A DNA stretch of 63,732 nucleotides, counting the filler, from Dugesia japonica (taxonomy: Eukaryota): the NCBI GenBank assembly GCA_001938525.1. It is 6 parts of 6 records of this genome, joined end to end, with 100 filler letters (N's around TTAATTAATTAA, not from the genome) between each part and the next. Parts side by side here need not be neighbours in the genome. Positions count along the whole stretch, not along the records: positions 37,910 to 55,553 come from MQRL01642602.1; 5 more parts are not named here. One strand, written 5' to 3'. The notes beneath the pieces are model-generated. The model was given only the letters and a program-made list of their open reading frames with translations. It made no database searches and was not told the origin of the DNA. The position numbers and the translations under genes were made by a program. This document shows positions 37,302-55,553 of the stretch, piece after piece (positions within the stretch are counted from its first letter, which is position 1; the number at the start of each line of letters is the position of its first letter).

Positions 37302-38179
37302 GTGTACGGTAAATAATAGAGAATTTTTTAAGATTGGATTTATCACCAAAAGTGCTAGTTTAAAAATATTACAGATGCTATTGTCAGTATAATATTTTTT
37401 TCCTATCTAACAGAATAATGAAATTAAAATCATTGTATAATTACAATTATTGTGAGAATAATTGTTGGACTTTAGGTCATGTATAGGTACTTTTTGATTT
37501 TAGGAAGAATGAAATCAAATTTAAAAATTTTAAATTTGAAAAATTCGTTTACGTTGACGTGTCACTAAATTTTTAACGCAATAATCAGATTCGTCATCAC
37601 TTTACGATTCAAACGATACCAAAATTTACTTAATTAAAACAAAAAATTACCACAAAAATTAAATTTTAAAAAAAGATAAAAAAAATAAAAATAAAAATAA
37701 AAAAAACAATAAAAAAAAAGATAAAAATAAAAAGTAAAAAAAAATCTTCATTCCAAAATTTTCTTTGCCCAGGGGGGGAACGGGGTGGGCTGATGCCTCA
37801 CTAAAAAAANNNNNNNNNNNNNNNNNNNNNNNNNNNNNNNNNNNNNNNNNNNNTTAATTAATTAANNNNNNNNNNNNNNNNNNNNNNNNNNNNNNNNNNN
37901 NNNNNNNNNGATTCCCATGAATTTTTTGTTATTAAATAAATTTTAATCAGTCACTTTTGTTTTTCTTAAAAAATTGTTAAAAATATTTTTAGTAAAAAAA
38001 AAAATAAAATAAATTTTTTGTTTAAAAAAAAAAATTTTTAAAAAAAAAAGATAAAAAAAAAGATAAAAAAAAAGATTAAAAAAAAGATTAAAAAAATTTA
38101 TAAAAATCTATTTTTAGTAACAGGGGGGAGGGGGGTAGAAAAGTGGAGGTTCAGTGCGGACATGTCTCACTACTATGCT

Positions 38180-38790
38180 ACTATACTGTTCAGATAACAA
38201 AAAAGTTGAAGAAGAAGTGACTTTTCTGAAACGACAGAATATAAAAGAAATTGAAGAAACAATGGCGTTAGTATATCGTGTAGAGAAAAAGGGAGATCAG
38301 GTTTATGCAGTTAGAAGTTACGCGAGAGTTAAAAAATTATCAAAAACCTGTAGATCATACAGTGAATAAACAAGTGGATCAAAGAAAGGAAAAACAAAAT
38401 TTCGAATGTTAGTCATGTCATAAGATAGATCATACTAAAGCAAATTGACCGACGAAAAAAGTGGTAGAGTATTGACTTGTCATAAAGCAGGAAATATAAT
38501 TCGAGATTGTCCAAATAAAAAACCGAAATGTTTTGGCTGTGGAAAAATTGATCATATTATAAGGTTATGTCAAGAAGTGAGGTGTAAACAATGTGAAAAT
38601 GGTGGCATTGGACAAAAGAGTACTACACAAATTGAGAAATGAAAAAAACCTGAGAAATTTATGACTGCAGAAAGATCAAGAAATACTCGATATAATCGAG
38701 TACATGCGATTGAAGATGAAGATGTCAATACAAACGATCGAAAGGTGGAAATATTCTGTAATTAAATAGATGAAAAAAATTACTAAAGAA
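38180..38790 (+). mobile_element. Ty3/Gypsy gag remnant with CCHC zinc knuckles
   Basis: TCHKAGNIIRDCP, CFGCGKIDHIIRLC and CKQCENGG(H) across frameshifts. Confidence 0.75.
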
Positions 38791-39518
38791 GGAAATTTTT
38801 GATTCTTTTTTTCGTAATAATTTAGTGTGATAAAATAATTTTATGTATCACCATAATCTATTTGATTTATATAAAAAAGTTTTCAACTTTGAGATAGCTA
38901 TTAAAAACCAATAGTAGTGGTTTAGTATTTTTGGTTAAAAATTTTAATTTAGAATTTTTAAAATTTGATTGGTTGAAAATTTGGGTAGAAAAAAATTTCG
39001 ATTTCAAATTTTATTGGTTGAATTTTTGTTCAAGAAGTTCGAAAGTTTGAATTTTGGTTTATAAATTTTTAGGTCAATTTTTATCGTATGGTTTCAAATT
39101 TGGTATGGTTGAACTTGTAATTAAATTCTGTATAAGGATATATATAAATTATAATTAAAATAATTTTAAAAATATTTTCAGACCATTAAAATCAAAATTA
39201 AAAGCTCCATAACAATATAATTTTTTTTTTCTCAAAACATGCTTGGTTCTATCAGAAAGAACTGTGGCTGTGGTATTACTATGTACTGTGTGTTTGTGTG
39301 TGCTGTGTTAGTTAAACTGTACTGTGGCTGTGGCTGTGTGTGTGCTGTGTTGTTATAANNNNNNNNNNNNNNNNNNNNNNNNNNNNNNNNNNNNNNNNNN
39401 NNNNNNNNNNNNNNNNNNNNNNNNNNNNNNNNNNNNNNNNNNNNNNNNNNNNNNNNNNNNNNNNNNNNNNNNNNNNNNNNNNNNNNNNNNNNNNNNNNNN
39501 NNNNNNNNNNNNNNNNNN

Positions 39519-39580
<62 letters not shown>

Positions 39581-41669
39581 TGTGAGTTGTTTAGAAGCAA
39601 GTTAAAAATTTTTTGTGCTCTGGTTGAAAATTGTGTTTTAAAAAAATTCAAAATCACAAATTAATACATAAATTAAAATAAATTAAAATTTTTGGAAATG
39701 ACAATTTTGTTTTGAAAGTTCAGAAAATTTTAAAATGATAATTTATTAGAAAGTGATTTTGTTTTGAAATTTTATGAAATTTTTTTAGCAAATGATCATT
39801 TTTTGTTTTATAATTTTTTAAAAATTTCAAAAGGATGTGTTATTAAAAAAATTATTATTTTCTGTAAAATTATCCAATTAATTTAAATCAAGTTTTAAAT
39901 CTAAATTTTTAAATTTGTGAAAAATAATTTCCCATTAGAGCATTTTGTTTGATTAAACAAATAATGATGGTTNNNNNNNNNNNNNNNNNNNNNNNNNNNN
40001 NNNNNNNNNNNNNNNNNNNNNNNNNNNNNNNNNNNNNNNNNNNNNNNNNNNNNNNNNNNNNNNNNNNNNNNNNNNNNNNNNNNNNNNNNNNNNNNNNNNN
40101 NNNNNNNNNNNNNNNNNNNNNNNNNNNNNNNNNNNNNNNNNNNNNNNNNNNNNNNNNNNNNNNNNNNNNNNNNNNNNNNNNNNNNNNNNNNNNNNNNNNN
40201 NNNNNNNNNNNNNNNNNNNNNNNNNNNNNNNNNNNNNNNNNNNNNNNNNATGTGTGCAGAGGTTGAGTGCTACTATCCCTCTACTAACTTTACTGAAATT
40301 AAAAGAAATTTAACAAATCTTATAAGATTAGTCCATATTTTAATTATGGAATTGCCTATGGACTTAGTTTATATCTTTTGTGTAAATATATAGAAAGTTA
40401 TAAAAATCAAGTTATACAAATAAAATTTGGACATAAAAATTTCAAACTAATGTCTCAATTGATAGGTAGGTGGTTGTAATTTACACATAGCTTTCAACAA
40501 TTTGTACAGAGTTTACTATATTTTACACAAACGTGGTGATAATATTTTTATAAGTGGTTACAATTTATGCATAGATGTCAGTAAATTACACATCTGTGGA
40601 CGTAATTCGTACACAAGTGGTTACAATTTGTACATAAGGGGTGATAATATGATTGTAGACCACTATAATTTATTCATGGAATAATGAAATTAGTGTATAG
40701 ATGATTAGATTTGATGCATATTCAATTGATAGATTAGTAATAAGTCAAATAATTTAATTGAACAATTTGACTCAATTAGCTATTAAGTGTAATATTGATT
40801 GACATTACTATATAACACTGGTTTTATTGTAACACATAAGCTTTACAGTAAATACCAAACATACTTTGAGAAAAATAAATTTTTATTCCTATAGAGCTTT
40901 TAATTCCGAGTGAATAGTTTAAAAATATTTTACAAATTATTATTATTTTAATTATTATTATTATTTATAATTAATTATTTATTATTTTGTGAACCGTGCA
41001 TATTTGTACAACAAATCCTGTGTGGAATATGTTCAGTTTTTAATTCTAAGACGAATGATATTAAATCTAAAGCCATTCAATCAGTATTGACTGGAAAATC
41101 CTTAAAACAAAGTTCAAGTGTTCTGATGCGCTACTACACCTGTAGTGAGAACCAAACACATTTTTAAAAAAGTAAAATTATATTCATATACAGAATTTAA
41201 TTACAAAATCAACCATACCAATTTTGAAATCATACCATGAAAATTCGCCGAAAAATTAAATTCCGAAAACTTAAATTTTTGAAATAGTCTACAAAAATTC
41301 GACAAACCAAAATCGAAATCGAAAATTTTTTTCATGTATTTTTATCGACCAATCAAAATGCTCAAATTTTCAGAACACTTTTTTCAAAACACTTGCGGGC
41401 GGGGGAGGAGGAGTATGGGGTTTAGTGCACTACTATCTCACTACTACCAATTCAATCTTTATCTTTTGGGTGAAAGTGTGGATTTCTCATTCACATTTTT
41501 CTATGGTTCTTTGTGCTACTATGAATAGCGAGTATTTTAATATTAATAGAATTTTAAGCTATTGACTAAATAACAACATATTAATATATTTCAAATTTAT
41601 ATGTAAGAAATCACTCTTTTCTTTTTGATTTTTATTTAATTCTTTAACATAAATAATTATGTGTTTTAG

Positions 41670-41807
41670 TGTGTCGCTTAAATATCAAAATGAAGACTGG
41701 ATGGTAAAATATCCCTTAGCAACAATAGGTTTTGGATATGGAATACCGTCATTGATTGTAACTATTTCTGGATGTATTTACTGGAAAGATTATATATCGA
41801 ATGACGT
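41670..41807 (+). CDS. Single exon of an adhesion/secretin-class GPCR (TM4 and ECL2 start)
   Basis: tttag|...|gtaag boundaries. Reads VSLKYQNEDWMVKYPLATIGFGYGIPSLIVTISGCIYWKDYISNDV, matching the 7tm_2 TM4 pattern GYG.P..IV.IS. Other exons were not identified. Confidence 0.65.
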
Positions 41808-42109
41808 GTAAGATTATTTATTTATATTTTTTTATTTTTATATAAATTTTTTCTTTATAAATAATAATTAAAATTTATTATTTGGGATATATTTTTTCAT
41901 GACAATTGGTGGGAAAATGTTGTTTTTACTTATTTGATTATTTAAAAATATTCTACCGTTTCTAAAACTTTTTAATTTTAATTAAAAAATTTTAAAAAAC
42001 GCCAAATTATTTTAATAATTACAATGACTATTGTAAGAGAAATTCATAGATTTTTATATATCTGAGAGGTTTTTTAATATTATATATATATATATTAAAA
42101 TTTATTTTT

Positions 42110-44200
42110 ATGAAAACTTTAAACCAAACAGAAGAATGTTACACAAATATGAACAGACAGTTTTGTTATCAGAACAAAAATGGACAGGCCAGAAAAAAAT
42201 TCGAAAATGGTAAACAAATATAATATTCAAATAATACGAATAACTACACAAAAAGTAATGGAAGTCACGTTAATTCAATTGACAAAAAAGGTAAAGATTG
42301 TTCATGTAGAGAAGACAAAGGCCACTTTTGTAATGAAGGATTGAATACTTATCAAGATGAATACCAAATGGCCAAGCTCTGATCGAAGTCGTGATTATCG
42401 GAGTGTTGAATTAAGTATCCAAATAAAATGCAGTATTCTTAATTATAGTAAAAGTAGTATAAATAAAAGAAAGGAAGATAAACTAGTAGATGGGTACAAT
42501 AATATAAAAGAAAAAGTTTACAAATTTGTAAAGAAAGAATTGATTAGAAGAAAACCAGAAATTATCAATGATATAAATTGAGAAGATGGCAGTGAAATTC
42601 TGACGATAGAAGAGATAAAGCGACAAGAAATAAGTTATTAGAAGATGCATGCTAGACTAAGTATAACGGTTAAAATACAAGGCGTAAAAGTTAATTGCTT
42701 ATTAGGCACTGGAGTAAAAGTTAATGTGATGAATTTGAGAATTTTGGAAAGATTGGGTAAAGTCAACATATTACAAAGTGAAAACAATTTAAGATGTGTC
42801 AATAATAGTCCGCTCGAAATAGTAGGTATGATAATTGTAGAAGTAGAATTCGAGAATAAAAGCGAAACAGTTAAATGCATTGTATTAAAACAGATACATT
42901 CAAATCTAATAGGAGAAATAATAATTACAGAAACAGTTTGGATTCCAACTGCTGAGAGAGAATAAATATGGACAATGAAATGTATCATTGTAATATAGAA
43001 GCAAAGTATGGACGCAGTACAACGGATAAAGAGAGAGTACAGAAAGCAATAAAAATATTTATTAACAAGCCAAACGAGAATTTGGAGAATGTTGTAATGA
43101 TTTATAAAAGAAATATTCATGGCAGACAACTGGGATATTGGCAGAACAACAATGACAGAACATCAAATAATCACAAATGAAGAACTAATAAATACGAAAC
43201 CATGGAGACAACTCATTCATTTAGAGAATAAAATCGATGAAGCTATCAAGAATTTGTTTGAAAATGGCATTATTAGGAAGTGTAATTCAAAATAGAACAC
43301 TCTGGTAATATATTGAGAAAAATATTGAGAAAAGATAAAAAGTGAAGACAATTTAAGATGTGCCAATAATAGTCTTCTCAAAATAATAGGTAAAATAGTG
43401 GTAGAGGTGGAATTTGAGAATAAAAGTGAAACAGTAAAATTTATTGTGGTGAAACATATACATCCAGATCTAATGGAAAGAATAAAATTACAGAAACAGT
43501 TTGGATTCCAACTGCAGATAGAGACTAAATGTGAGGTTAACCAAATGTATCTTTGTAATACAGAAGCCAAATGAGATTTTAGAGAAAGTTATAATGATTC
43601 AAAAAGAATATTCATGGCAGGCAACTTGAATATTAACAGAACAACAATAGTAAAGCATCAAATAATCAACCTATAAATACAAAACAATGGAGACAATCAA
43701 TGCACTTAGAAAATAAGATAGATGAAGCTATCAAGAATTTAGAAAACTGAATGCAACCACAGAAAGACAAGCATTTCTAATGCCCAATGTAGAGGAAATA
43801 CTGGACAGTTTGAGTGATACAATATATTTTAGTACTATTGATTTCGGTAATGCATACTATAAAGATTCACAATAGAAAACAGTATTTTCTACGAAAATAG
43901 ACAGTATTTTTCACAAGAATGCCTTTTAGTATAGCTGCAGCACCTAGAACGTTTCAAGAATTAATGACAGAAGTATATGGAAAATTAAGAGGAACGATGG
44001 TATACATGGATAATATATTGATATTTACAGAAAATTTAGAGCAGCACTATGGAATTTTTGTCAACTTTTTAAAAGTATTCAAAAATCAGCATTGAGAATT
44101 AATCTGGAAAATGTCATTTATTGAGAGTAGAAGTCAAATTTTTAAACATGTCATAAAAAAGAATGGAGTTAAAATTGATCCAAAAAAATTGAAGCGATAT
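42110..44200 (+). mobile_element. Ty3/Gypsy pol remnant (protease, RT) with an internal duplication
   Basis: Protease VNCLLGTGVKVNVM (D->G in D-T-G). RT fragments FLMPNVEEILDSLSDTIYFSTIDFGNAYY, RMPFSIAAAPRTFQELM and VYMDNILIF. Segment ~42775-43255 is repeated at ~43340-43740. Confidence 0.85.
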
Positions 44201-44579
44201 CTAAAAATACCCATAGATTAAAAATTGAAAAAATTAATTTTGAAAATTTGGGATGTTCAATTGATTTAAACAATTTTTAATTTCATATTATTTAAACAAC
44301 ATGGGTTGTTCATCCGGATTCCTATAAATAATTACAAAAACATTTTCCTAAATAAAAAGCTTGAAAATCGTTTTTCAAAGTAAAAAGCATAAGAAACGTT
44401 TCCACTTAAAAGGTTTAAGAAATGCTACTGCTTAAAATGCCTAAAAAATATTACCGCTTAAAAATCATAAAATAATAAATCTTTTATAAATAATTTTTTT
44501 ATTAGGTTAGATGAAAATTTAGGAAATTCACAATATTGATTAGACATATTCTTTTTATATATCGTATTTTATTTTAGCA

Positions 44580-45477
44580 ACATGCTTGCAATATAAAAAA
44601 TATTGTTCAAGCTCTTTCCATCTAAGAAACTGTCTTGATATTATGAAAGTATATTATGTTCAGACATTTTCTGGAACAAAATATTACATATAACAAATTG
44701 TAAAACATTAGGTTTACGTATATATGAATGTTTTTATAAGTTACACACAGACCACATTGCACAATTTAAAACAAATAAAAAACCACTTTTAAAGAAAGTA
44801 CTTGCAGAAACCGATATAAACGCTCCTCCAACTAAGAGCACGACAGGAACATGTATTAGATCATCCGCCGGCAAATATAATTAACAATGTAAGAAATACT
44901 GAGGAAATAGAAAATATAGTTCTTAGGAATTATTTGAATGAAAACGGATGGAATTATAATGAAATAGATGAAGATAACAAAATATTTTGAAGAAGAGGAA
45001 GAATTTCTAAACCAAGTCGGTAAATCATTTGGTGAACCTGAAATAGAAAAATACTCGTACGGATGCCACAAGATTTTTACGCATGTTGTTTCTTGTTATA
45101 ATATTAAAGAAATAATTTTAGCATTAATTAACAAATTAATAGACATAATCAAAGAACTGCAACAAGTTAAAATGCGATTTGGACTTAATGTTGAATTTGT
45201 TTGAGATAAAGATATATAAACTTGTAGAATCTCAAATTGAGCAGTTCCTTTGAGCGAAAACATTTCGAAGAAGGTTTAGAAATAAAACCCATTAGAAATA
45301 AAACTGGTTCAAGCGGAAAATCAACCGTATTTTGGAAATTAATTTCAAAATAACTTAAGTCAGCAATATCAGTAGACTTCCCGGAAGTAGTTTCATTCAC
45401 ACACAAAAAATTCTCAAAGAAAAAACAGCCATTATTAATGTCAAAAATAATGACAATTTATGTTTTATATACAGCAT
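44580..45477 (+). pseudogene. Polinton pPolB N-terminal fragment, truncated
   Basis: Ends in AIINVKNNDNLCFIYSI, homologous to GVINIENKDNKCFLYSI of the 49970 ORF. It stops exactly at an AGTAGGTGGATAG terminus (45478). The left boundary is approximate. Confidence 0.6.
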
Positions 45478-48303
45478 AGTAGGTGGATAGATACACACTG
45501 GGTCACTTATGATATTTTTTTGACTTCTGTGCATTTTTATAAAATATTCAGTGACTTGTAACCTGTCGCACCTAGGTTTTTATTTGTTTATTTTTCTTTT
45601 AAATACATAATTATTAGTCAGTAAAATCAATNATTTGACCATAAGTTATACATCATTATATGAAAATATGAGTTTCATTATTGGAGAATAATGGACTTAC
45701 CATAGAAAGAATTGTGGACTTATAATAGAAAATACAAATTTTACCATTAGAAAATATGAATTTGGTCATAGATAATATTTAATAGAGTAAATCTAGTCAC
45801 TAATTATACTGCCTTTATTATATAAATAGTCAATTAAGATACTTAATTTACCTACTTTTGTCAATTTTTACTTATTTTTCAACCAATCTCCTACGTTAGC
45901 CATTTTCTGCCATTTTTTCCCCAATAATTTCCTAATTTACCCATATTTATCCACATTTAACTATATTTTCACTTATTTTCTACCATTTTCCTTCATTTAN
46001 CAAATTTTCTCTATTTTCTAATGGGTTTTAATGCATATTTTCACTCCATATTTCGATAAACCCCACTTGACTAATCTTTAAAAAATCTCATATATTTATA
46101 AAAGAAGACAATAAAAGAAGACTGTGCGAGACTTAGTGTGATATGCTTATTATTTAAAATAATATAATTATTCCATGATATTTTAATAATCTTATTATAC
46201 TTCTGCTTCTCTGCTTGCTCATTTGGCAACCCTTCTTCGACTTTAGTTTTATGAGTTTCTTTTTATTTTTAATACTTAATATTCAGATATATTGTTAAAG
46301 AATAAAAGTTCAACATAGAAAGTACTCGATTCATCATTAGAAATATTAGTTTCAATAAGTAAAGTGATGGTCTCATCATTGGAAATATCGGGTTTTTCAT
46401 GAACATATGAGTTTAATAGAAAGTACAGTGATTTTTAATTTAATTAAACTTTATTAAATTTCCTTTGAAAAGACTTTATATTTATGTATGAGATGGGCAG
46501 ACTCAAATTCATGGGCATGTGATTTTTAGTGTATATATTTTGCATCTGAGTTGCATCTGAGTTGCATACCAATTGCATTTATTAAAAAATCAATAAAAAT
46601 TCTCAGGCATGGGATTTTCAGTGTATGTGTATTGCATCTGAGTTGCATTTGAGCTGCAAACCTATTGCATTTATGAATAAAAATTCCCAGGAACGTTATT
46701 TTTAGTGTATATGTGTTGCATCTGTGTTGCAACTTTATTGCACACATACTGCATTCATTAATAAAAGACTATTTACAATAAGAAACATTTATTACAACAA
46801 CTGTTTTTATTTTCTTCTTCTTTAAAGTTTCTTTCTTTAAATGGATTTCTATTGGTTCCTCACTTTTCATTGGTTTCTAGTTTGTTTCTGTCCCTTCTAC
46901 AACCAATAAAAGTACACATACATACACAACAAGTATATAAATAGAGATTATTTTAAATATTTCATTATTTATAAAATGTTAGATATTCACAATTCATCAC
47001 ACAAGCAATATAAAATGCTCAAGCAGATAGATATATGCAACAAAGATAATGAAGATAATGTAGATTCTCTACCCAATAAAGGATACAAAGTGTTGTCAAT
47101 CAAGCCTATACACTGAACGATATGGACAATTTGAATAGGTGCATATTTAATAAAGCAGAGAGGATAAAAAGAGAATAAAATTTGGAACCAATTATGAATC
47201 CAATGACAGAAATATCCAACAACGAAATTTTGTTGTATCAATATAAATTGGAGACAAAAGTACAAAATGTCTTCATGCTTTGATAGAAATTTAATTTCTT
47301 GATAGTTTGGTGGTAATATTATTATTAATGTTAATGCAATAATTATTATTTAATTAGGTATTAAGAAAAGAAGAAAGCATTAATAAACTTCAATTCGATC
47401 CAAACGTTCTTGAAAACATGAAATTTTTGATGAAAAACTTGGTAAAGTTTTTTGAACTTGATCCGCCAACAGCAGCTATCGAGATTTATAAGGAAGACAA
47501 GTAAACATTACTAATAAATTGAACATGGATATACAATGTCAGAGTCCTGAGATAATCCATGTAAACAGAACAAATGTTAAAATACAAGCTCTATCCATTG
47601 CATTTAGTGTAGATAGAAAGATAAATAGAGGTAATATTTTTTTATTCATGTAAATTTATTAATTATTAGTTTAGATCCAGTGCGCAATGTCAAACAATCA
47701 CACCAACATCTTGTTTCTAGGTTGTAAAAGACTTTATTTGTTAAGTGTTGTAAATACTTTGTATACTTTTATATGTTGTTGTTTTTTCAATTTTATATAA
47801 TAAATCTTATTTTAAACATATAGTTTTAATTAAATCTTATAATTAAATAAAAAATCTTTTTTTAAATTACTTTCTTGAATTGTTGGTAATATTTTTAATT
47901 CGGATACAAAATAATTTCTTTCAATATTTTCCAGCATTTCTTCTTTCACAAGGTCCAAATTCATTATTAATGTACATTTAAACTAATTTTGTTTATATTT
48001 AATATGCTATCGTCATGTACAATCCATGTTTGCAATAAAAAATAACTCAATAAATTATAAAAAAACGTAATAAATAATAAAAGAAAACAAACGATAATAA
48101 CAACTTTTATTTAAATAAATGCAATAATGTACAATTTTGGTCCTAAAGACGACCGGTTATACGTTCACAAATGTTTTTTTGAGAATAATTTCTGTTTTTA
48201 GTCATAATCTAAATAAAAACAATTAAAATAACATTTTTAAAAAAATACCGTTTTTTACTAGACTTGATTGAATGACCGGTTTTATGGAAAAATCTATTTA
48301 ATA

Positions 48304-48960
48304 CTAGTTTTCATATGGGACACTACTATTTTTATTAATCCATACCAGCTTATTGTCCGTGTTTTTTAATACTATTTTATTTGACTTAATGCTATACAAT
48401 TGGTGATTTTTGGTGTTTATTCGAAAATAATTTACCGAGACTGATTTGTTCTTATTATAACAGTCAAGATAAGACTGATGAGATATTTTTGTATCCTTTA
48501 ATGATATGCCTTTGGCTCTCATGCTGTTCTTATCTCCGAGCAGGCTATAGCATTTCGGTCTCAAAAAATATCCATTCTTGATACTTCTTCACTTTATTCT
48601 CATCTTTGAATTTCCCAATAACTGAGTTCATGCTGTTAATATAAACGGTATGATCTTTATCATAATTTGAAGTATCAAGTAGCTGATCTCTCACTATACT
48701 TGCTGTTATTTTTCTAATTTAGTATTTTTTTATTTCTAGACATAAACTATCCGTACAGCCGGCTAAAATATTAATTTTACAAATAAATTCCTTCCTATAC
48801 TTGTCCAACTCAATGTACTGCAGTTCATACATTCTCAATTTTGAGAGGTCAAATAAAGTTTGTCCTATGTAGCTCAAACGATAAAAAAAAACTTACTCCT
48901 TATTGAGAAAACCCACTATCAAATCATCATCACTTTTAGTTGTTTTCTTAAATCCGGCTT
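48304..48960 (-). pseudogene. Polinton pPolB C-terminal fragment, intein-free motif C
   Basis: YIGQTLFDLSKLRMYE, ILAGCTDSL (motif C), LDTSNYDKDH, IGKFKDE, LRPKCYS, RAKGI, K..L...DNK..W. Confidence 0.85.
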
Positions 48961-49038
48961 TTTATGTACATGTAATATATATAATATATGAGTAATAGCA
49001 AATATACGTTTTTAAGCCAGGGGGTACCCTAGCCTTAA

Positions 49039-49280
49039 CATGAAAAATGTCAAATGAAAATATCGAGTGAAATATTTTTTATGAAAAATGTCAAATGAAA
49101 ATATCGAGTGAAAAATATCGAGTGAAAATATCGAGTGAAAAAATCGAGTGAAATATTTTTTATGAAAAATGTCAAATGAAAATGTCAAATGAAAATATCG
49201 AGTGAAAATATCACAGGAATAACACACGAATAACACACATCAATATCACACGAAAATATCGACACGAAAAATATCGAATG
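49039..49280 (+). repeat. Subterminal tandem repeats of the Polinton end
   Basis: Mixed ~13-bp units GAAAATATCGAGT and GAAAATGTCAAAT, with a higher-order duplication. Confidence 0.85.
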
Positions 49281-49439
49281 ACCAAATTAAAAATATCCGA
49301 TTTAAGAGGAAAATTGCGTGAGACATTTAAGAGGATGTAAAATGTTGTATGCGGCATTTAAGAGGAATAATAAAAAATGTAATGAAAAATAAAACTACCC
49401 CGTTTTAGAAGGTGTTTGATTAAATTAATTCTATAGAAA

Positions 49440-52400
49440 ATGAGTGATATAAATAGATGTCCTAATTGTAGAAAGTTGTTTAAAAATTTGGCTGGGTTAA
49501 CAAGTCATGTTAGATCTCGAACTTGTTTCATAGAAGAAAGAACATTTTGATGTGAAAGATGTCATCGAACATTTAATACAGAAATTGGATTACGAGAACA
49601 TTTAAATTCAACAAACTGTGGAAATCCAAATAATGTACCATTAAGTTGTTTAATATGCAAAAAAACTTTCTTATATCAAAATCATGCAAAAGCACATTAC
49701 AATTCTAACAAACATAAAGAAATGTTTAATAGAGTTTTATTTGGAGAATTGCCTGGCGAAGAAGCAATTGATTTCGATCCAGAAATTAGAGATCTTTTTA
49801 GACAATACAAAGATTATCAAATTGAATATTTTAAGGAAAGTAAAGTGTTAATGAAAAAGAAAGTAGAAGAAATAATTGACACACCAATTAGAGATATTAA
49901 CACATTTCAAAATAAGTAAAAGAAATTATTACTAAATATTTTAATTATGGAAAAAAGATTGTTATAAGCATGTCAGTAAAATGTAGATATACAAAAGACA
50001 CAAACAATGAAAATGTTGAAAGAGATTTTAATTCATATACAAAGAATAAACGATTTCCAATTCTAGGTGAAATTGAAAATGGTGTAAACGAAATGTTAAA
50101 TGAATTACAAAGATATATTGAATATGAAGATCGAGAAGGATCAGGATGGACAATGAAGCATATTGTGGATTATAAAATTGATTTAAGTAAATATCATTCG
50201 TTAGCTGGAGCAACATATTGCAAATTTCCATTTAAAAAACCAGGTGTAATCAACATAGAAAATAAAGATAATAAATGTTTTCTATATTCAATCTTAGCAC
50301 ATAAACATCCAATTGATCATCCAACACGTGAAGAGAATTACATTCCACATTTATCAGATTTAAGATATCACGGTTTTAAATTTCCTATGAATATTGATGA
50401 CATAAAAAAATTCGAGAAATTAAATAATTTAGAAATAAATGTATTTGGTGTAAATGCTAATAAAAAACTTGAACCATTACACATTTCACATCATATAATA
50501 AAACCAACACCAGAAGAAAATAAATGTAATTTGTTGGTGTATAAAGACCATTATATTTTATGTAGAGATCTAACCGTATTTTTCGCAACAAATAGTAATA
50601 AAAATTATCGATGCATTCGATGTATGAATTGTTATTCCACTGAAGAATTATTAATTAAACATCAAGAAGCATGTATTAAACATAAATCAAATAACATTGT
50701 TTTTCAATATATTGATTATTATTATTTTGACAAATATTATCAGAAAAATAAAATACCATTTATATTTATTGGAGATTTTAAAGCTTATACTAATATACAA
50801 ACTAAAAAACAAAAATCATTATCATTAGGCATTTATCTTCATAGTGATTATCCAGATTTAATTGAAAGTAATTATTATCAATTTTCAGGTGAAAACATTA
50901 ATAATGATTTCTTTGAGTTTTTAGAAGATGTTAATAATGAATTGCAAAATATTAAACAAAATAAATTAATAAAAGAATACACAAATACAAACCATCCAGA
51001 TTTTACACCTGACACAAAATGTCGATTTTGTGAAAATAAAATATATGCAACTCCGGTTAAAGACCATAATTATTTCACAGGAGAATTTCGTGGATGGTCA
51101 TGTAAACAATTTAACTTAAATGACACAAGTGTAAAACATTTGTTTATACCATTTTCTTTTCATAATGCATCTGGTTATGATAACCATTTATTCTTTAAAG
51201 AATTATTAATAAAATTTCCATCAAAGGTAAAAAAAATATTACCTCACACAAGCGATAATTACATTTCATTTCAATATAAAGATATTAAATTTTTAGATTC
51301 AAACAGATTACTTCCATTCACACGAGTTGAAACAATGGGGGTATTATTAACACAATCAAATAATTATCTAATATTAAATTCATTTGATTTAAAACCAAAG
51401 AAAGCACATTTCCCACATGATTATGTAGAAGGAAATAATATCACAGAAGTTGAAGAAATGTTAAAATCAAATCAAATACCAAAGAAGATTTTTACAATAT
51501 ACTTACACAAAAAAAGATATCCGATCAAGATTATGCTGCATTTTTAAATGACTTCGAAGATTTTGAAAATATGTGGGATTACATGATGCATTATAGGAAA
51601 CTTGATGTTTTAATTCTTGCAGATTTCTTAGAACACTTTCGAGATTCATGTTTAAATAATCTTCTTCGATTAGATCCATGTTCTTGGGAAACAGAAATGT
51701 TAAATTCAAATGTTAAATTAAAATATGCAAAACCTGAAACATATTACACTTTCTTATTAATTGAAGAAGGTATTAGAGGTGGATATTCTGGAGTATTAGG
51801 TGAAAGACAAGTATTTAGTCACAATTCTAATAAACCTTACAGACAAATAAATAAAGCACAAGGAGAAGATATATCAAAAATGGTACGTGAAGGAAAAAAT
51901 ATTCCAGATGAATATTTTGAAGATACATTTATAAAATATATTGATGAAAATTCCTTATATGCAAGTTGTATGACATGGCCATTACCAACAGGTGAAATGT
52001 GTGAATCTCATAATTTAGAATATGAAAAAGCAAGTGAAGTATTAAATTATATTTATGAAGTCGATTTAGAATATCCCCCAGAAATACATGATAAGACAAA
52101 ATATTTTCCATTATGTCCAGAAAGAATAAATATTACAAAGGACATGTTAAGTAATTATCAAAAGAGTTTCAAAAAGAAATTACCAGAGGAAAATATTAAA
52201 CTTACACTAAATCAATTTGACAAGAAAAATATGCAGTACTAGGCTCCACTTTATATTTATATTTAAAACTTGGAATGAAATTAATAAAAGTACACAAGAA
52301 AATTTTAATGAGAACATCTTCATGGTTTAAAGATTATGTTCATAAATTAGCAGCATTAAGAAAAGAAGCCAAAAGAAATCGTGATGTTTTTGGTGATTAT

Positions 52401-54031
52401 ATTTATAAATTAATGATAAAAGCTTTCTATGGAAAAACACTAGAAAATATTAGGAATAGGTGCAACATAGAAATAGTAGATAATGACAGTGATTATCAAA
52501 AGTTCTCATCTAAAATAAATTTTAAATCAAGTAAACATTTTACAAAAAAATGATAATAACGAAGTCAGTGTTGCAGCAATGCACATGGTAAAAGGTAAAT
52601 TGAGATATAATAAATTTCCTTATATTGGATTTACAATTCTCGAACATGCAAAACGAGTAATGCATGAATTTGTATATACGAAAAAATGCAACCTTTAATT
52701 GGAGAAGATAACTATAAAATTCATTACAGTGATAGTGTTACATCAAACACTCCAATAATACTACGAAAAAATAATAAAGTTGAAATAAAAAAGATTTCAG
52801 AAATCTCAACATGTTATACAAAACACTTTGATGGCAAATATTATTCTTATCCAGAAAATTATGAGATATGGACGAAAAGTAACTGGGTCAAATTAAATAA
52901 AGTAATTAAGCATTCTACAATTAAAAAGATTTATAGAGTTAAAACTAAAATAGGAATTATAGATGTGACACAAGATCATTCATTATTAAATGACAAAGGT
53001 GAACAAATAAAACCAACAAATGTAACAAATGAAACTAAATTACTTCACAATAAAATATTTAAAGCAAACAATGAAAAAAAATATTTATAAAATTTTATCT
53101 GATATTTATGAGAATGAACCTAATGATTTAAATTTAAAGGCGGCTTTTATAGACGGTTTCTTTCTTGGAGATGGATCAGCAGGAATTTATAATTATAAAT
53201 CAGGAGTAAAATATTGTTGTACATTTAATAATCAAGATTTATATTTATTAAATAAAATAAAAAATTTCATAAAGAAGTTTATGATAAAGAAACAATGATT
53301 TTTCGATACAATGAAATCATCCCATGTTTATAAACTTCATTTACAAAACCCTATAAAACATGTGAAGTATTATTCTAAAGATTATTATAATGAATTTGAA
53401 AAGAGTAAAAAAATTCCAGAATATATTTTAAATGCATCATTTGACATTAGATATTGGTTCTTTGTAGGCTTTTATGCGGCAGATGGCACTAAAACGTTCA
53501 ATGGAAAAAATAGTTATAGAAAAAACTGTTAGATTTTTAAGAGAAGGATTAGAAGATGATTATGACATTTAAACTGAAGATGGATCATTTAATTGCGGAT
53601 TTCCATTAATAATAAAAAATACGGATTGTGTTTTTACTGAGATAAAAGGGAGAGAAAATTTAACAAAATTAGAAAGTAGGAAATGATTTGTTTCAGATGA
53701 AAGATGAAAAGCCTGATTCTGAAATAATACAATGTGATTTTATAAAAGCAAAAAGTTATGGATATTCATATAATGATAATCAAGGAAATTTGGAATTTGA
53801 ATCAAAAAATAAGGGTATTAAAAAAAGTAAAAAATGATGATGAAAAATTTTGATGATGTTTTAAAAGATTCAAAAGAAATAGTTTATGGAACTAATTGTT
53901 CATTAAAATCTAAATTACATGAAATTCAATTAGTAAAACAAAATAATATCGCATTAGTGGGATATGATGATAAAAGAATTATAGAAGATAATGCAACAAA
54001 AACATGGCGACATGGAAATCAATATGAATGA
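49440..54031 (+). pseudogene. polB: Protein-primed family B DNA polymerase (pPolB) with N-terminal C2H2 fingers, endonuclease VII-like module and intein; frameshifted
   Basis: ATG at 49440. Motifs in order: three C2H2-like fingers, EGSGW, INIENKDNKCFLYSI, CRFC...DHNYFTGEFRGWSC, exonuclease FHNASGYDNHL and FLDS, GIRGG, motif A YIDENSLY, YEVDLEYP..IHD, motif B YKLMIKAFYGKTLEN, motif C YSD|intein|TDC, KAKSY, KNKGI, YDDKR. Several stops and frameshifts. Confidence 0.92.
52734..53620 (+). mobile_element. Intein with LAGLIDADG homing endonuclease inserted at PolB motif C (degenerate)
   Basis: Block A SVTSNTPIILR; block B IDVTQDHSLL (TxxH); blocks C/E FIDGFFLGDGS and FFVGFYAADG; block F/G YDI*TEDGSFNCGFPLIIKN, followed by +1 Thr (TDCVF). 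Confidence 0.92.
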
Positions 54032-54107
54032 GAAAATTGTGAAATTTGGCATTTAAGATTAGATCTAATAAATAAAACATTAACATGTATATTTTTATTA
54101 TAATAAA

Positions 54108-54581
54108 ATGACGATTACAACGAGTGCAACAAGTGTAACGGAAGAAGAATTAGAGAAAATAGTAAATTCAAAGAAATGTAAATCGGTAAAGATTGATGGG
54201 AAAAATTATTATATCAGTAAAAAAGTAAAAAATGAACTTAAAGCCCAATCTAAAGAAGGTGGCTTTGCTTTTCTAGCCGCAATACCAGCAATTATAGCTG
54301 GCTTAGCATCTTCTGCCGGAATTGCATTTGTAATTGCATCTGGAGTTGCGTCGACTGTTGCAAGTTCAAGACAAGCAATCAAAACACAAAAAGAAATACA
54401 GGCTTTAGACGCCCCAAAAGGCGATGGCATATATTTAACACCTTATCAAAGTTCGGCAATACATAAATATTTAAAGAATATCATTGATGATCCTAACTTT
54501 AAAGATTTAACAAAAAAGTTTAAAGATGGAATTGAATTAATTCAACAAGGTGATGGATTATATTTAACATATAGAAAATAG
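54108..54581 (+). CDS. Polinton/adintovirus pX-like virion protein
   Basis: Intact 157-aa ORF with EGG|F followed by a hydrophobic helix (AFLAAIPAIIAGLASSAG) and two GDG(I/L)YL repeats, a pattern typical of Polinton pX-like core proteins. Confidence 0.7.
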   Translation: MTITTSATSVTEEELEKIVNSKKCKSVKIDGKNYYISKKVKNELKAQSKEGGFAFLAAIPAIIAGLASSAGIAFVIASGVASTVASSRQAIKTQKEIQALDAPKGDGIYLTPYQSSAIHKYLKNIIDDPNFKDLTKKFKDGIELIQQGDGLYLTYRK

Positions 54582-54582
54582 A

Positions 54583-55450
54583 ATGAATACAAAACAAGTT
54601 GAAAATAGAATTAGAGATTTAAAAGCTTTAATTAAAGGTCAAGAAAAATATAATGATTTTTTCTGTGCAAGAAACTAGCAAAGCAAATTATCAATTTTAC
54701 AACAACCAACAATTACAGCAATAGAAAAAACTAAAAGTAATAAACCAATAGAACCATTACTAGAAAATGAAATATTAAATGAAGAACAGGAAGATAAAAA
54801 AATCTGTTTTATGATAAAAAATAAACTAAAAATAGAACTAACCCTTAAACATGGAAAAATTATGGAATTATTTTCAGAAGATAATACAACACCATTTCAT
54901 CCAGAGAATATGACATTTAAAAATAGAATATTAACAAAAAGAATAACTACAGTAGTAAATTTAATAGATGTGGCGATTAATAAAAATTTTACAATGTTAA
55001 ATTATAAAGATAGTGAAGTGATTATATTTTTCTTTAACATTTGCAGGAAATCACATTTTTCAGTTAATGTGAAAATTCATATTTATCATGAAAAATTTAA
55101 AGATATAATTATGGGGAATAGAGGAAAAATAGGAGATGATGAAGATACAAAACATTATATTGAAATATATTTAAATGATATAATAAAACATGCTACTATT
55201 AATAATCAATATTAGTATTTTTTAAAATCGAAAATAGTAAAAGGAAGAGCAAAAAGTTTACCCAGAACCCATAAAGGAAAATCTCTTGGGCCGATTGACT
55301 TATTTGAAAAGTAAACATTATTAATTTCAGCAGCAAAATCTGGACATGAAAATGTTGATGAAGAAATTAAAGAGACATGTAAAAAATTAAAGATGATGGG
55401 TTTAATATCTAACATGGTTTATAAAAAATATAAAACTAAAACTTTCTCTT
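54583..55450 (+). pseudogene. Conserved uncharacterised Polinton ORF, frameshifted
   Basis: Starts MNTKQVENRIRDLK. Ends in LLISAAKSGHENVDEEIKETCKKLKMMGLIS, resembling the LL....AGN....EI..I...L...G.I tail of a recurrent Polinton gene (from recall). Confidence 0.5.
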
Positions 55451-55481
55451 AGAAAATAGCAAAGCTTGAGCTACGGAAAAA

Positions 55482-55553
55482 ATGTCGCATCAATTCTTAA
55501 TAGTTGGAAAAGAACAAGATTTAAAATTAGATTTAAAATTTCCTATAGAATTA
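55482..55553 (+). CDS. Probable start of the Polinton minor capsid (penton) protein, cut by the gap
   Basis: MSHQFLIVGKEQDLKLDLKFPIEL resembles the N-terminal strand and (P)PIEL motif of Polinton minor capsid proteins. Only 24 codons are visible. Confidence 0.5.

What the first reader, a model, noticed from the sequence alone, without database searches (positions are those of the whole stretch)
52734..53620. LAGLIDADG intein inside the protein-primed PolB of an endogenous animal Polinton-like virus
Seen: the pPolB reads ...KIHYSD, then about 887 nt of foreign sequence, then TDCVF. The insert starts with Ser (SVTSNTPII), has TQDH, two LAGLIDADG-like motifs (GFFLGDGS, GFYAADG) and ends ...LIIKN before Thr. 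Established: this is the YGD|TDS 'pol-c' site used by inteins in archaeal and giant-virus RNA-primed PolBs, and canonical inteins are essentially unreported from animal nuclear genomes. From memory, not alignment, segments such as KKIYRV.T..G.IDVT.DHSLL, NNQDL..LNK, DTMKSS.VYKL and P..ILN closely track the Mimivirus PolB intein, including Lys in place of the penultimate His. Inference: the intein crossed between a nucleocytovirus polymerase and a protein-primed Polinton polymerase, implying co-infection or a virophage-like lifestyle, and was then fossilised in an animal germline. The element is contiguous (40250-55553) with an adhesion-GPCR exon and Gypsy remnants, which argues against contamination.
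Basis: partly seen in the sequence, partly recalled or inferred. Interest (0 to 1): 0.93.

Follow-up and report, generated by a model that had tools for sequence, protein, structure and literature searches.

The report
Decayed giant-virus-type intein in Polinton polymerase
A broken copy of a self-splicing protein insert (an intein) of the kind found in giant-virus DNA polymerases sits at the catalytic motif of an unrelated, protein-primed polymerase of a Polinton-type virus-like element integrated in a eukaryotic, possibly animal, genome, which shows that this parasite-of-a-gene has jumped between two different polymerase families.

Summary
The stretch 52734-53620 is an intein-derived insert. 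It starts with Ser after Y-S-D, carries block B (T-Q-D-H) and two LAGLIDADG motifs, and ends K-N before T-D-C. Its stop-free pieces, searched apart, match hundreds of inteins (best E 2.9e-34). Full-length relatives align to the window with outer bounds exactly 52734-53620.

The host gene is a protein-primed family B polymerase. It has a PF03175 signal, and its relatives at about 29% identity come from Mb-scale eukaryotic contigs, including a snail and a coral. It is not a giant-virus polymerase.

Every classified relative of the intein sits in another protein: mostly RNA-primed PolB at YGD|TDS, and none in a protein-primed polymerase. The two best full-length matches are the Megavirus (44%) and Mimivirus (40%) PolB inteins, both returned as named hits. 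Many metagenomic inteins are about equally close, so no specific sister or direction of transfer can be claimed.

Both gene and intein are broken: at least 8 frame changes and 2 in-frame stops. Several frame changes lie at homopolymers and could be assembly errors.

The animal host, the GPCR exon and a 15-kb element are not confirmed. No earlier report was found in the searchable literature. Interest is moderate to high.

The parts
49916..54031 (+). [quoted passage not shown] The first ATG of the long ORF is at 49970. The 3' end is uncertain.
   Evidence: The 525-aa first ORF finds 116 relatives (best E 1.3e-44, about 29% identity), several of them with PF03175 and PF02945. Later pieces match the same relatives collinearly: 21 and 2 of the 116. 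PF03175 hits the motif-B piece at E 1.4e-5 and 24.7 bits, against a cut-off of 25.8. Translated homology spans 49916-52478. The part after the insert is assigned by reading only, with no Pfam hit. Interruptions outside the insert: at least 6 frame changes and no in-frame stop.
52734..53620 (+). Intein-derived insert (Hint splicing domain with a nested LAGLIDADG homing endonuclease), broken. It is 887 nt, about 50-55 codons shorter than the Megavirus and Mimivirus PolB inteins.
   Evidence: Three stop-free pieces match successive parts of a profile of 223 related inteins (E 2.4e-42, 2.4e-9, 3.7e-14). The fourth, C-terminal piece found nothing against that profile. In the PDB, NEQ068, the Nanoarchaeum PolB split-intein N half, matches at E 8.8e-5. 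Interruptions inside the insert: 2 frame changes and 2 in-frame stops.
52725..52733 (+). N-extein side of polymerase motif C (Tyr-Ser-Asp), directly before the insert.
   Evidence: Direct reading. In relatives, the three residues before intein position 1 are YGD in 119 cases and YSD in 2.
53621..53629 (+). C-extein side of motif C (Thr-Asp-Cys). The Thr is the +1 nucleophile.
   Evidence: Direct reading. Relatives resume with TDS in 109 of 109 cases. This piece aligns with Mimivirus PolB 1387-1408 across the junction.
52734..52736 (+). Intein residue 1, Ser (block A nucleophile).
   Evidence: Aligned with Ser in 170 of 170 related intein starts.
52968..52979 (+). Block B (N3), Thr-x-x-His.
   Evidence: Direct reading. 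It aligns with the corresponding Thr-x-x-His of the Mimivirus intein. Ogata et al. describe N3 Thr and His as conserved there.
53155..53178 (+). First LAGLIDADG motif, acidic residue present.
   Evidence: Pfam LAGLIDADG_3 at E 1.6e-4 and 22.3 bits, against a cut-off of 22.5. It aligns with Mimivirus PolB 1180-1231 at 44% identity.
53467..53490 (+). Second LAGLIDADG motif, acidic residue present.
   Evidence: Aligns with Mimivirus PolB 1243-1303 at 45% identity.
53615..53620 (+). Last two intein residues, Lys-Asn (block G). The penultimate residue is Lys instead of His.
   Evidence: Direct reading. Among relatives, 33 of 109 also end KN, including Mimivirus.
51011..51118 (+). Endonuclease VII / HNH-like Cys-His block inside the polymerase, just before the exonuclease domain.
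   Evidence: PF02945 is weak in the window (E 0.045) but is found in 33 of 35 aligned relatives. In P0168 it lies directly before PF03175.
42645..44095 (+). Neighbour, not part of the element: remnants of an LTR-type retroelement (aspartyl protease and reverse transcriptase pieces) with an internal tandem duplication of about 560 nt.
   Evidence: gag-asp_proteas E 6.6e-4 and RVT_1 E 5.6e-5. Direct repeats D3-D6.
41653..41808 (+).
   Evidence: 7tm_2 at E 0.07 and 12.7 bits, against a cut-off of 20.6, over 29 residues. No other stretch in 40250-42350 supports a receptor gene.

Best explanation
The stretch 52734-53620 is the decayed remnant of a class-1 intein with a nested LAGLIDADG homing endonuclease. 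It lies between the Asp and the Thr of catalytic motif C (Y-S-D|T-D-C) of a protein-primed family B polymerase. That polymerase belongs to a Polinton/Maverick-type element integrated in an AT-rich eukaryotic genome.

How it worked when intact is inferred from the known mechanism of such inteins. The insert was translated within the polymerase precursor. Ser1 made the N-O acyl shift with help from block B Thr and His. Thr+1 attacked the ester. The terminal Asn cyclised. The two halves of motif C were joined, which restored the metal-binding Asp pair. The endonuclease cut intein-free copies of the same motif-coding DNA, so that repair copied the intein in (homing).

The intein belongs to the Ser1...Asn|Thr family that lives at YGD|TDS in RNA-primed PolBs of giant viruses (Mimivirus, Megavirus and many metagenomic polymerases). 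It must therefore have moved between two non-orthologous polymerase families that share little more than this motif. That requires both DNAs in one cell at some time. The direction and date are open.

The present copy cannot be translated through, either in the gene or in the insert. It is a relic.
For: Shown:
- Junctions and motifs are read directly.
- The N piece has 1633 library hits with best E 2.9e-34. In the hits, the matched region coincides with PF14890 Intein_splicing.
- The PDB hit is the NEQ068 PolB split intein.
- At related intein starts, Ser1 occurs in 170 of 170 and YGD precedes in 119. The ends are HN 71, KN 33, SN 4 and RN 1. TDS follows in 109 of 109.
- Of the 150 best hits, phmmer against two reference hits sorted 104 as RNA-primed PolB and 19 as topoisomerase II. 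Thirteen of the other 27 went through Pfam: 12 are RNA-primed PolB and 1 is an XRN exonuclease. Fourteen, mostly fragments of 140-376 aa, were not classified. None of the 150 shows similarity to the window's polymerase pieces.
- In the translated comparison, P0360 gives 131 of 298 identities. Its cluster holds Megavirus caiporensis PolB. P0336, Mimivirus PolB residues 1053-1403, gives 122 of 303. These rank 1 and 2 of 223.
- Piecewise BLASTP to Mimivirus PolB is collinear.
- The Mimivirus intein coordinates and its YGD|TDS site agree with Ogata et al. 2005 (PMC549080).
- The host gene is protein-primed PolB.

Inferred: the splicing and homing chemistry, and the co-presence of the two DNAs in one cell.
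Against: - No Hint family of Pfam hits the window's own pieces directly. Only LAGLIDADG_3 does, 0.2 bits under its cut-off.
- The part of the polymerase after the insert has no database support, so 'motif C' on that side rests on reading T-D-C plus the alignment across the junction.
- No intein-free or intein-bearing relative of this polymerase that reaches motif C was available. Whether the insert is typical or exceptional in this polymerase family is therefore unknown.
- The sets of inteins compared were picked by similarity, so the true nearest relative may be unseen.
- The insert is a single copy in a single assembly.
Confidence: 0.85

Rival explanations
1. The host genome is not an animal. 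The contig would come from a protist, a fungus or another AT-rich eukaryote, or from a eukaryotic contaminant or symbiont in an animal assembly. The intein would then be one more protist or virus-borne intein rather than the first in a metazoan genome.
For: The piece is about 25% G+C. No host gene was identified. The 7tm_2 match is sub-threshold. There are no tRNA or Rfam matches. Giant viruses of the Mimivirus type, and inteins in general, are known mainly from protists (Green 2018, PMC5784728; Anaeramoeba paper).
Against: The only named relatives of the polymerase are from a gastropod and a coral, on contigs of 42-46 Mb, and most unnamed ones lie on Mb-scale contigs. LTR-retroelement remnants lie next to the gene. 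Neither point is decisive at 29% identity.
Confidence: 0.35
2. The intein is an old resident of protein-primed polymerases. It would have been inherited vertically within Polinton or virophage lineages, and the giant-virus PolB inteins would derive from such elements rather than the reverse.
For: Identity to the best giant-virus inteins is only 40-45%, and ranks differ by piece, so there is no recent donor. The G+C of the insert equals that of the gene. Krupovic et al. 2024 (PMC11161782) suspect repeated intein invasions of Polinton polymerases.
Against: None of the 150 best library hits matched the window's polymerase pieces, and none of the 136 that were classified is a protein-primed polymerase. 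The family is very diverse in RNA-primed PolBs, with 795 hits at E<=1e-10. However, only the best 150 of 1633 hits could be seen.
Confidence: 0.2
3. The gene and intein are less decayed than the assembly suggests. Many frame changes would be homopolymer indel errors of long-read assembly in AT-rich DNA.
For: 5 of 8 frame-change zones hold a homopolymer of 6 or more. The expectation is 1.8, and 1.6% of random draws reach 5.
Against: Two in-frame stop codons lie inside the insert, and the insert is about 50-55 codons shorter than its best relatives. Homopolymers are also natural slippage hot spots.
Confidence: 0.3
4. The locus is a fragment of an endogenous giant-virus polymerase (RNA-primed PolB with its usual intein), not a Polinton polymerase.
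For: The intein's nearest relatives all sit in RNA-primed PolBs.
Against: The flanking pieces give no PF00136 or PF03104 signal and no hit to any of the 150 intein hosts. They match PF03175-bearing relatives collinearly. Outside the intein, BLASTP to Mimivirus PolB gives only E>1.
Confidence: 0.02

Closest known systems
Mimivirus (R322) and Megavirus PolB inteins, the position III / pol-c allele of RNA-primed family B polymerases
   Same: The architecture is the same: Ser1, block B Thr-x-x-His, two LAGLIDADG motifs, terminal Asn and Thr+1. The penultimate Lys is shared. The insertion point, between Asp and Thr of the catalytic motif, is the same. Identity is 40-44% over about 300 aligned positions, and the pieces are collinear (Ogata 2005).
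   Different: The host protein is a protein-primed polymerase (PF03175 type) with no detectable similarity to the Mimivirus polymerase outside the insert. The motif reads Y-S-D|T-D-C rather than YGD|TDS. The insert is about 50-55 codons shorter and is broken. It lies in chromosomal DNA of a eukaryote, not in a virus genome.
Archaeal PolB pol-c inteins (Nanoarchaeum NEQ068/NEQ528 split intein, PI-PkoII, Tli Pol-2 type)
   Same: The insertion site and the fold are the same. NEQ068 is the best solved-structure match for the N piece (E 8.8e-5). PI-PkoII gives a weak LAGLIDADG match.
   Different: Similarity is much weaker than to the giant-virus group (E 1e-4 against 7e-27 for the same piece).
HNH and VSR nuclease domains inserted in Polinton polymerases (Jeong et al. 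2023, PMC10748475; Krupovic et al. 2024, PMC11161782)
   Same: These too are nuclease-bearing insertions in Polinton protein-primed polymerases, and they have been read as traces of intein or homing-element invasion. This gene also has the HNH/Endonuclease VII-like block.
   Different: Those are bare nuclease domains with no splicing domain described. Here the full Hint splicing domain with both junction residues is present, the nuclease is LAGLIDADG, and the site is motif C.
Polinton / Maverick protein-primed polymerase
   Same: There is a PF03175 signal, an exonuclease motif after the HNH block, motif B, Y-x-D-T-D, and relatives on large eukaryotic contigs.
   Different: Identity to the nearest relatives found is only about 29%. 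None of the other hallmark genes of such an element is in the piece.

Membership tests
Intein (class 1, Hint domain) | Nucleophile (Ser/Cys) at position 1 | tested here: met
   Ser at 52734-52736, aligned with Ser in 170 of 170 related starts.
Intein (class 1, Hint domain) | Block B Thr-x-x-His | tested here: met
   T-Q-D-H at 52968-52979, aligned with the Mimivirus block.
Intein (class 1, Hint domain) | C-terminal Asn followed by Ser/Thr/Cys | tested here: met
   Asn at 53618-53620, then Thr. The junction aligns with Mimivirus 1387-1408.
Intein (class 1, Hint domain) | Penultimate His | tested here: not met
   The residue is Lys. This is not disqualifying: 33 of 109 relatives, Mimivirus among them, also end Lys-Asn.
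Intein (class 1, Hint domain) | Significant sequence similarity to Hint splicing domains | tested here: met
   E 2.9e-34 to proteins in which the matched region is PF14890. NEQ068 in the PDB. Profile E 2.4e-42. Pfam itself does not hit the window's piece.
Intein (class 1, Hint domain) | In-frame insertion that leaves the host protein whole after splicing | tested here: not met
   The site is exact, but the insert is 887 nt with 2 frame changes and 2 stops, and the host gene is broken too. In its present state it is a relic.
Intein (class 1, Hint domain) | Protein splicing activity | not testable with these tools
   No experiment was possible, and the copy cannot be translated through.
LAGLIDADG homing endonuclease (two-motif, intein-nested) | Two LAGLIDADG motifs with acidic residues | tested here: met
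   Motifs at 53155-53178 and 53467-53490. Pfam LAGLIDADG_3 scores 22.3 bits against a cut-off of 22.5. The alignments to Mimivirus are at 44-45%.
PolB position III (pol-c) intein allele | Insertion between Asp and Thr of Y-G-D-T-D-S | tested here: met
   Y-S-D|T-D-C in the window. YGD|TDS in 119 relatives and in Mimivirus.
PolB position III (pol-c) intein allele | Host is an RNA-primed family B polymerase (PF00136/PF03104) | tested here: not met
   The flanks have no PF00136 or PF03104 signal and no similarity to the 150 hosts. The occupation is therefore non-allelic: the homologous motif in another family.
Polinton / Maverick element | Protein-primed family B polymerase | tested here: met
   PF03175 at 24.7 bits in the window (cut-off 25.8). 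It is above the cut-off in relatives that align with the window's pieces.
Polinton / Maverick element | Retrovirus-type integrase, double jelly-roll capsid, packaging ATPase, maturation protease | tested here: not met
   None was found among ORFs of the piece. The piece ends 1.5 kb after the polymerase, so they may lie beyond it.
Polinton / Maverick element | Terminal inverted repeats and 6-bp target duplication | tested here: inconclusive
   No long inverted repeat involves the polymerase region. The other end is outside the piece.
Metazoan nuclear genome (host) | Linked animal genes | tested here: inconclusive
   There is only a sub-threshold 7tm_2 match, plus named animal relatives of the polymerase at 29% identity.

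The most novel reading that the evidence does not exclude
This would be the first canonical (Hint plus LAGLIDADG) intein recorded in a metazoan nuclear genome. It would be carried by a Polinton polymerase that acquired it by non-allelic homing from a Mimivirus-type giant-virus polymerase. That would be a molecular record that ancestors of an animal Polinton once replicated in the same cell, perhaps the same virus factory, as a giant virus, much as virophages do.
Probability: 0.25. Interest if true: 0.85.

Novelty: new variant of a known kind. Interest (0 to 1): 0.62.

Why it matters
Inteins spread by homing into the same site of the same gene. Documented jumps to a different protein family are rare, and they reveal which genomes met inside one cell. 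Here a giant-virus-type polymerase intein occupies the homologous catalytic motif of a protein-primed polymerase.

That links two branches of the same virus realm, giant viruses and Polinton/virophage-like elements, through a shared parasite. It also gives a concrete marker for tracing their past co-replication.

It turns a suspicion in the literature into a case with both splice junctions and all splicing blocks visible. The suspicion was that nuclease domains in Polinton polymerases are traces of intein invasions (PMC11161782).

If the host proves to be an animal, it would also qualify the statement that metazoan genomes lack inteins (PMC5784728), although only as a dead, virus-borne copy.

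Tried and rejected
- Pfam on the window's own pieces gives no Hint family and only a near-threshold LAGLIDADG_3 match.
- The word-indexed protein search with the N piece found nothing, because only proteins of 74-234 aa were candidates.
- A profile of the polymerase's N-terminal part with 34 relatives, run against solved structures, hit only C2H2 zinc fingers and no phi29-type polymerase. Single pieces against solved structures gave nothing.
- None of the 116 polymerase relatives reaches motif C, and none matches the intein profile. They give no empty-site or filled-site comparator.
- Minus-strand ORFs at 48304-48877 looked by eye like a second, intein-free polymerase remnant. Pfam, phmmer against the relatives and a translated comparison with the main gene gave no support, so the idea is dropped to a side note.
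- A multi-exon receptor gene next to the element was not found.
- Rfam and tRNA scans were blank.
- A specific sister relation to Mimivirus was rejected, because the per-piece ranks are inconsistent (61, 3 and 14 of the sets).
- An endonuclease restricted to the YGD site was rejected, because the two endonuclease pieces also match inteins at other sites.
- Kapitonov and Jurka 2006 could not be read because it is not held. An early mention of inteins in Polinton polymerases therefore cannot be excluded.
- Six literature searches pairing 'intein' with Polinton, Maverick, protein-primed polymerase, virophage or metazoan-genome terms found no report of a Hint intein in such a polymerase.
Full report
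SCOPE AND RULES. I worked only on 37910-55553. The piece holds two N gaps (39359-39518 and 39973-40249) and two single N, and none was filled. I made no repaired, joined or consensus version of the element or its genes. Every query from the broken gene was a single stop-free piece given by reference.

SLIPS, DECLARED.
- My first notebook entry cites the ranges of some stop-free query pieces, and their ends lie at interruptions.
- The scripts hold such ranges as input.
- The script printed labels made of those ranges.
- The script printed the bounds of three stop-free stretches so that I could hand them to Pfam.
- While working out the counts, I reasoned over ORF ends listed.
- In one search I built an HMM profile (hmmbuild) from 223 natural inteins returned by the searches and used it only as a detector.

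1. The DNA and the ORF translations show the polymerase frame reading ...K-I-H-Y-S-D up to 52733. Ser follows at 52734. T-Q-D-H is at 52968-52979, and the two LAGLIDADG-type motifs are at 53155-53178 and 53467-53490. The insert ends ...K-N at 53620, and T-D-C-V-F follows from 53621. It is 887 nt long.

2. IT IS AN INTEIN.
- The N-terminal stop-free piece is 134 aa: 16 residues of polymerase followed by 118 of insert. Scored against 1.84 billion representatives, it gave 1633 proteins at E<=1e-3, 795 at E<=1e-10, and a best E of 2.9e-34.
- In the top hits the matched stretch coincides with Pfam PF14890, Intein_splicing.
- Among solved structures, the best match of the insert's N part is NEQ068, the N half of the Nanoarchaeum PolB split intein (E 8.8e-5). 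The endonuclease piece touches I-PanMI and PI-PkoII weakly.
- Pfam on the window's own pieces gives only LAGLIDADG_3, at 22.3 bits against a cut-off of 22.5.
- Against a profile of 223 related inteins, three pieces of the window match successive parts: profile positions 1-115 (E 2.4e-42), 108-165 (E 2.4e-9) and 173-240 (E 3.7e-14). The fourth, C-terminal piece found nothing there.
- A translated comparison with full-length relatives gives outer bounds of exactly 52734 and 53620.

3. THE FAMILY IT BELONGS TO.
- At the position aligned with the window's Ser1, all 170 related intein starts have Ser. The three residues before it are YGD in 119 cases.
- Where the C junction could be located (109 cases), the inteins end HN (71), KN (33), SN (4) or RN (1). 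All are followed by TDS.
- This is the position III (pol-c) allele described for Mimivirus and archaea (Ogata et al. 2005, PMC549080).
- Of the 150 best hits, phmmer against two reference hits sorted 104 as RNA-primed family B polymerases and 19 as type II topoisomerases. Nineteen of the 150 were scanned with Pfam: six of the best hits, which confirmed five PolB and one topoisomerase assignment, and 13 of the 27 unsorted ones, of which 12 are RNA-primed PolB and 1 is an XRN exonuclease. Fourteen, mostly fragments of 140-376 aa, stayed unclassified.
- Two of the closest unnamed hosts were checked against solved structures. One (P0309) is polymerase-delta-like, as giant-virus enzymes are. The other (P0109, which also has Y-S-D and K-N) is RB69-like.
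- The family therefore already occupies several non-orthologous hosts.

4. THE MIMIVIRUS LIKENESS.
- A region-restricted search with the intein of hit P0067 returned the Mimivirus B-family polymerase as a named protein (P0336, 1740 aa).
- My junction mapping places its intein at 1053-1403, the coordinates published by Ogata et al. The junctions read YGD|S...KN|TDS.
- In the translated comparison it ranks second of 223, with 122 of 303 identities (40%).
- First is P0360, with 131 of 298 (44%). Its 90% cluster holds the Megavirus caiporensis polymerase.
- Piece by piece against P0336: 55 of 132 (42%, E 7e-27), 23 of 52 (44%, E 3e-14), 29 of 64 (45%, E 3e-12), and 12 of 22 across the C junction (E 2e-5). 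All are in collinear order.
- One short piece between the third and last gives nothing.
- The likeness is real, and the penultimate Lys is shared.
- It is not specific, however. In per-piece rankings Mimivirus is 61st, 3rd and 14th, and Megavirus is 116th, 1st and 59th. Many metagenomic polymerase inteins reach 42-51%.
- The window's intein is one more deep branch of this family, not a close kin of any sampled virus.

5. THE HOST GENE IS A PROTEIN-PRIMED POLYMERASE.
- The first ORF (525 aa) finds 116 relatives (best E 1.3e-44, about 29% identity). Nearly all lie on large contigs, up to 46 Mb. Two are named, from Gigantopelta aegis and Montipora capricornis.
- Relatives that extend far enough carry PF03175 directly after an Endonuclease VII/HNH block (P0168). 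Of 35 aligned members, 33 hit PF02945 and 6 hit PF03175.
- The next two pieces of the window match the same relatives (21 and 2 of the 116, down to E 1e-23). The motif-B piece hits PF03175 itself (E 1.4e-5).
- Translated homology spans 49916-52478 on the + strand only.
- None of the polymerase pieces matches any of the 150 intein hosts. Outside the intein, the comparison with Mimivirus PolB gives only E>1.
- The part after the insert has no database support. Its assignment rests on the reading T-D-C, on the alignment across the junction, and on polymerase-like motifs seen by eye.

6. STATE OF THE COPY (counts only).
- Polymerase before the insert: at least 4 frame changes.
- Insert: 2 frame changes and 2 in-frame stops.
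- Polymerase after the insert: 2 frame changes.
- The insert is about 50-55 codons shorter than the two Mimiviridae inteins.
- Five of the 8 frame-change zones contain a homopolymer of 6 or more. The expectation is 1.8, and 1.6% of random draws reach 5. Some frame changes may therefore be assembly errors or slippage.
- The stops and the shortfall are not of that kind.
- G+C of the insert (0.22-0.25) equals that of the gene.

7. SURROUNDINGS.
- Upstream, 42645-44095 holds aspartyl-protease and reverse-transcriptase remnants with an internal duplication.
- The supposed adhesion-GPCR exon is one 7tm_2 match of 12.7 bits against a cut-off of 20.6, and no other stretch supports a receptor.
- No integrase, capsid, ATPase or protease gene, no terminal inverted repeat, no tRNA and no Rfam family was found.
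- The piece ends 1.5 kb after the polymerase.
- What is shown is a polymerase gene remnant next to retroelement debris, not a 15-kb element.
- The organism was not identified.

8. MECHANISM. Shown: the anatomy (both junction residues, block B, two endonuclease motifs, the exact site in the catalytic motif) and the family relationship. Inferred from established intein chemistry: splicing that rejoins the two halves of motif C, and homing by the LAGLIDADG enzyme into intein-free copies. Also inferred: because the two polymerase families share little beyond this motif, the transfer was a non-allelic homing or recombination event that needed both DNAs in one cell. A giant virus and a Polinton-like virus in one host would provide that, as virophages and giant viruses do. 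Direction and date are open. The present copy is a relic.

9. WHAT IS KNOWN.
- Green et al. [quoted passage not shown]
- Jeong et al. 2023 describe HNH and VSR nuclease domains in Polinton polymerases (PMC10748475).
- Krupovic et al. 2024 suggest these result from intein invasions (PMC11161782).
- The Anaeramoeba study argues that giant viruses carry inteins between eukaryotes (PMC10710043).
- Six searches of the held literature pairing intein with Polinton, protein-primed polymerase or metazoan-genome terms found no report of a Hint intein in a Polinton, Maverick, virophage or other protein-primed eukaryotic polymerase.
- Kapitonov and Jurka 2006 is not held.

- I did not look up or fetch other genomic copies or relatives of the locus (look-up of encoding contigs, the search for related loci, collection scans with the DNA search). 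I could not tell whether that would fetch a virus of animals.
- No structure was predicted. Half a Hint domain from one piece would fold poorly, and the pieces may not be joined.

VERDICT. This is a new variant of a known kind: a giant-virus-type PolB intein in a protein-primed polymerase. Interest is 0.62. It is held down by the single decayed copy, the unidentified host and the unresolved direction of transfer.

Noticed in passing
window 51011-51118 (+): The polymerase carries an Endonuclease VII / HNH-like Cys-His block just before its exonuclease domain. 33 of 35 aligned relatives hit PF02945. This recalls the HNH-bearing Polinton polymerases of Jeong et al. 2023, so the gene holds traces of two different homing-type nucleases.
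   Followed up: partly
window 48304-48877 (-): Three short minus-strand ORFs read by eye like the motif C to K-x-Y region of another protein-primed polymerase, without an insert. Pfam, phmmer and a translated comparison gave no support.
   Followed up: yes
window 49044-49208: A block of tandem repeats with 13, 14 and 27-nt spacing lies about 0.8 kb upstream of the polymerase start. It could be subterminal repeats of the element or plain satellite.
   Followed up: no
window 46505-46765: Three direct repeats of about 85 nt at 78-84% identity. Their nature is unknown.
   Followed up: no
window 42772-43255 and 43336-43740: A tandem duplication of about 560 nt (81-85% identity) lies inside the retroelement remnant, so the protease-like region is present twice.
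   Followed up: no
window 38988-39161 and 41160-41333: An inverted repeat of 174 nt at 70% complementarity brackets both N gaps and an (AAT)n run. It may be the ends of another transposon.
   Followed up: no
proteins P0017, P0024, P0043, P0109 (hits, not the window): Close relatives of the intein's splicing domain also sit in type II topoisomerases (19 of the 150 best hits), in an XRN 5'-3' exonuclease, and in an RB69-like polymerase that shares the Y-S-D and K-N junction residues with the window.
   Followed up: partly
window 54108-54581 and 54811-55215 (+): Two intact ORFs of 157 and 134 aa lie downstream of the polymerase. The first has a long hydrophobic stretch. There is no significant family match. 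They may belong to the element.
   Followed up: partly
relatives P0185 and P0224: The gene models of the polymerase relatives that reach furthest stop shortly after motif B, before motif C. Whether they are cut there by introns, breaks or inserts of their own could not be seen.
   Followed up: no
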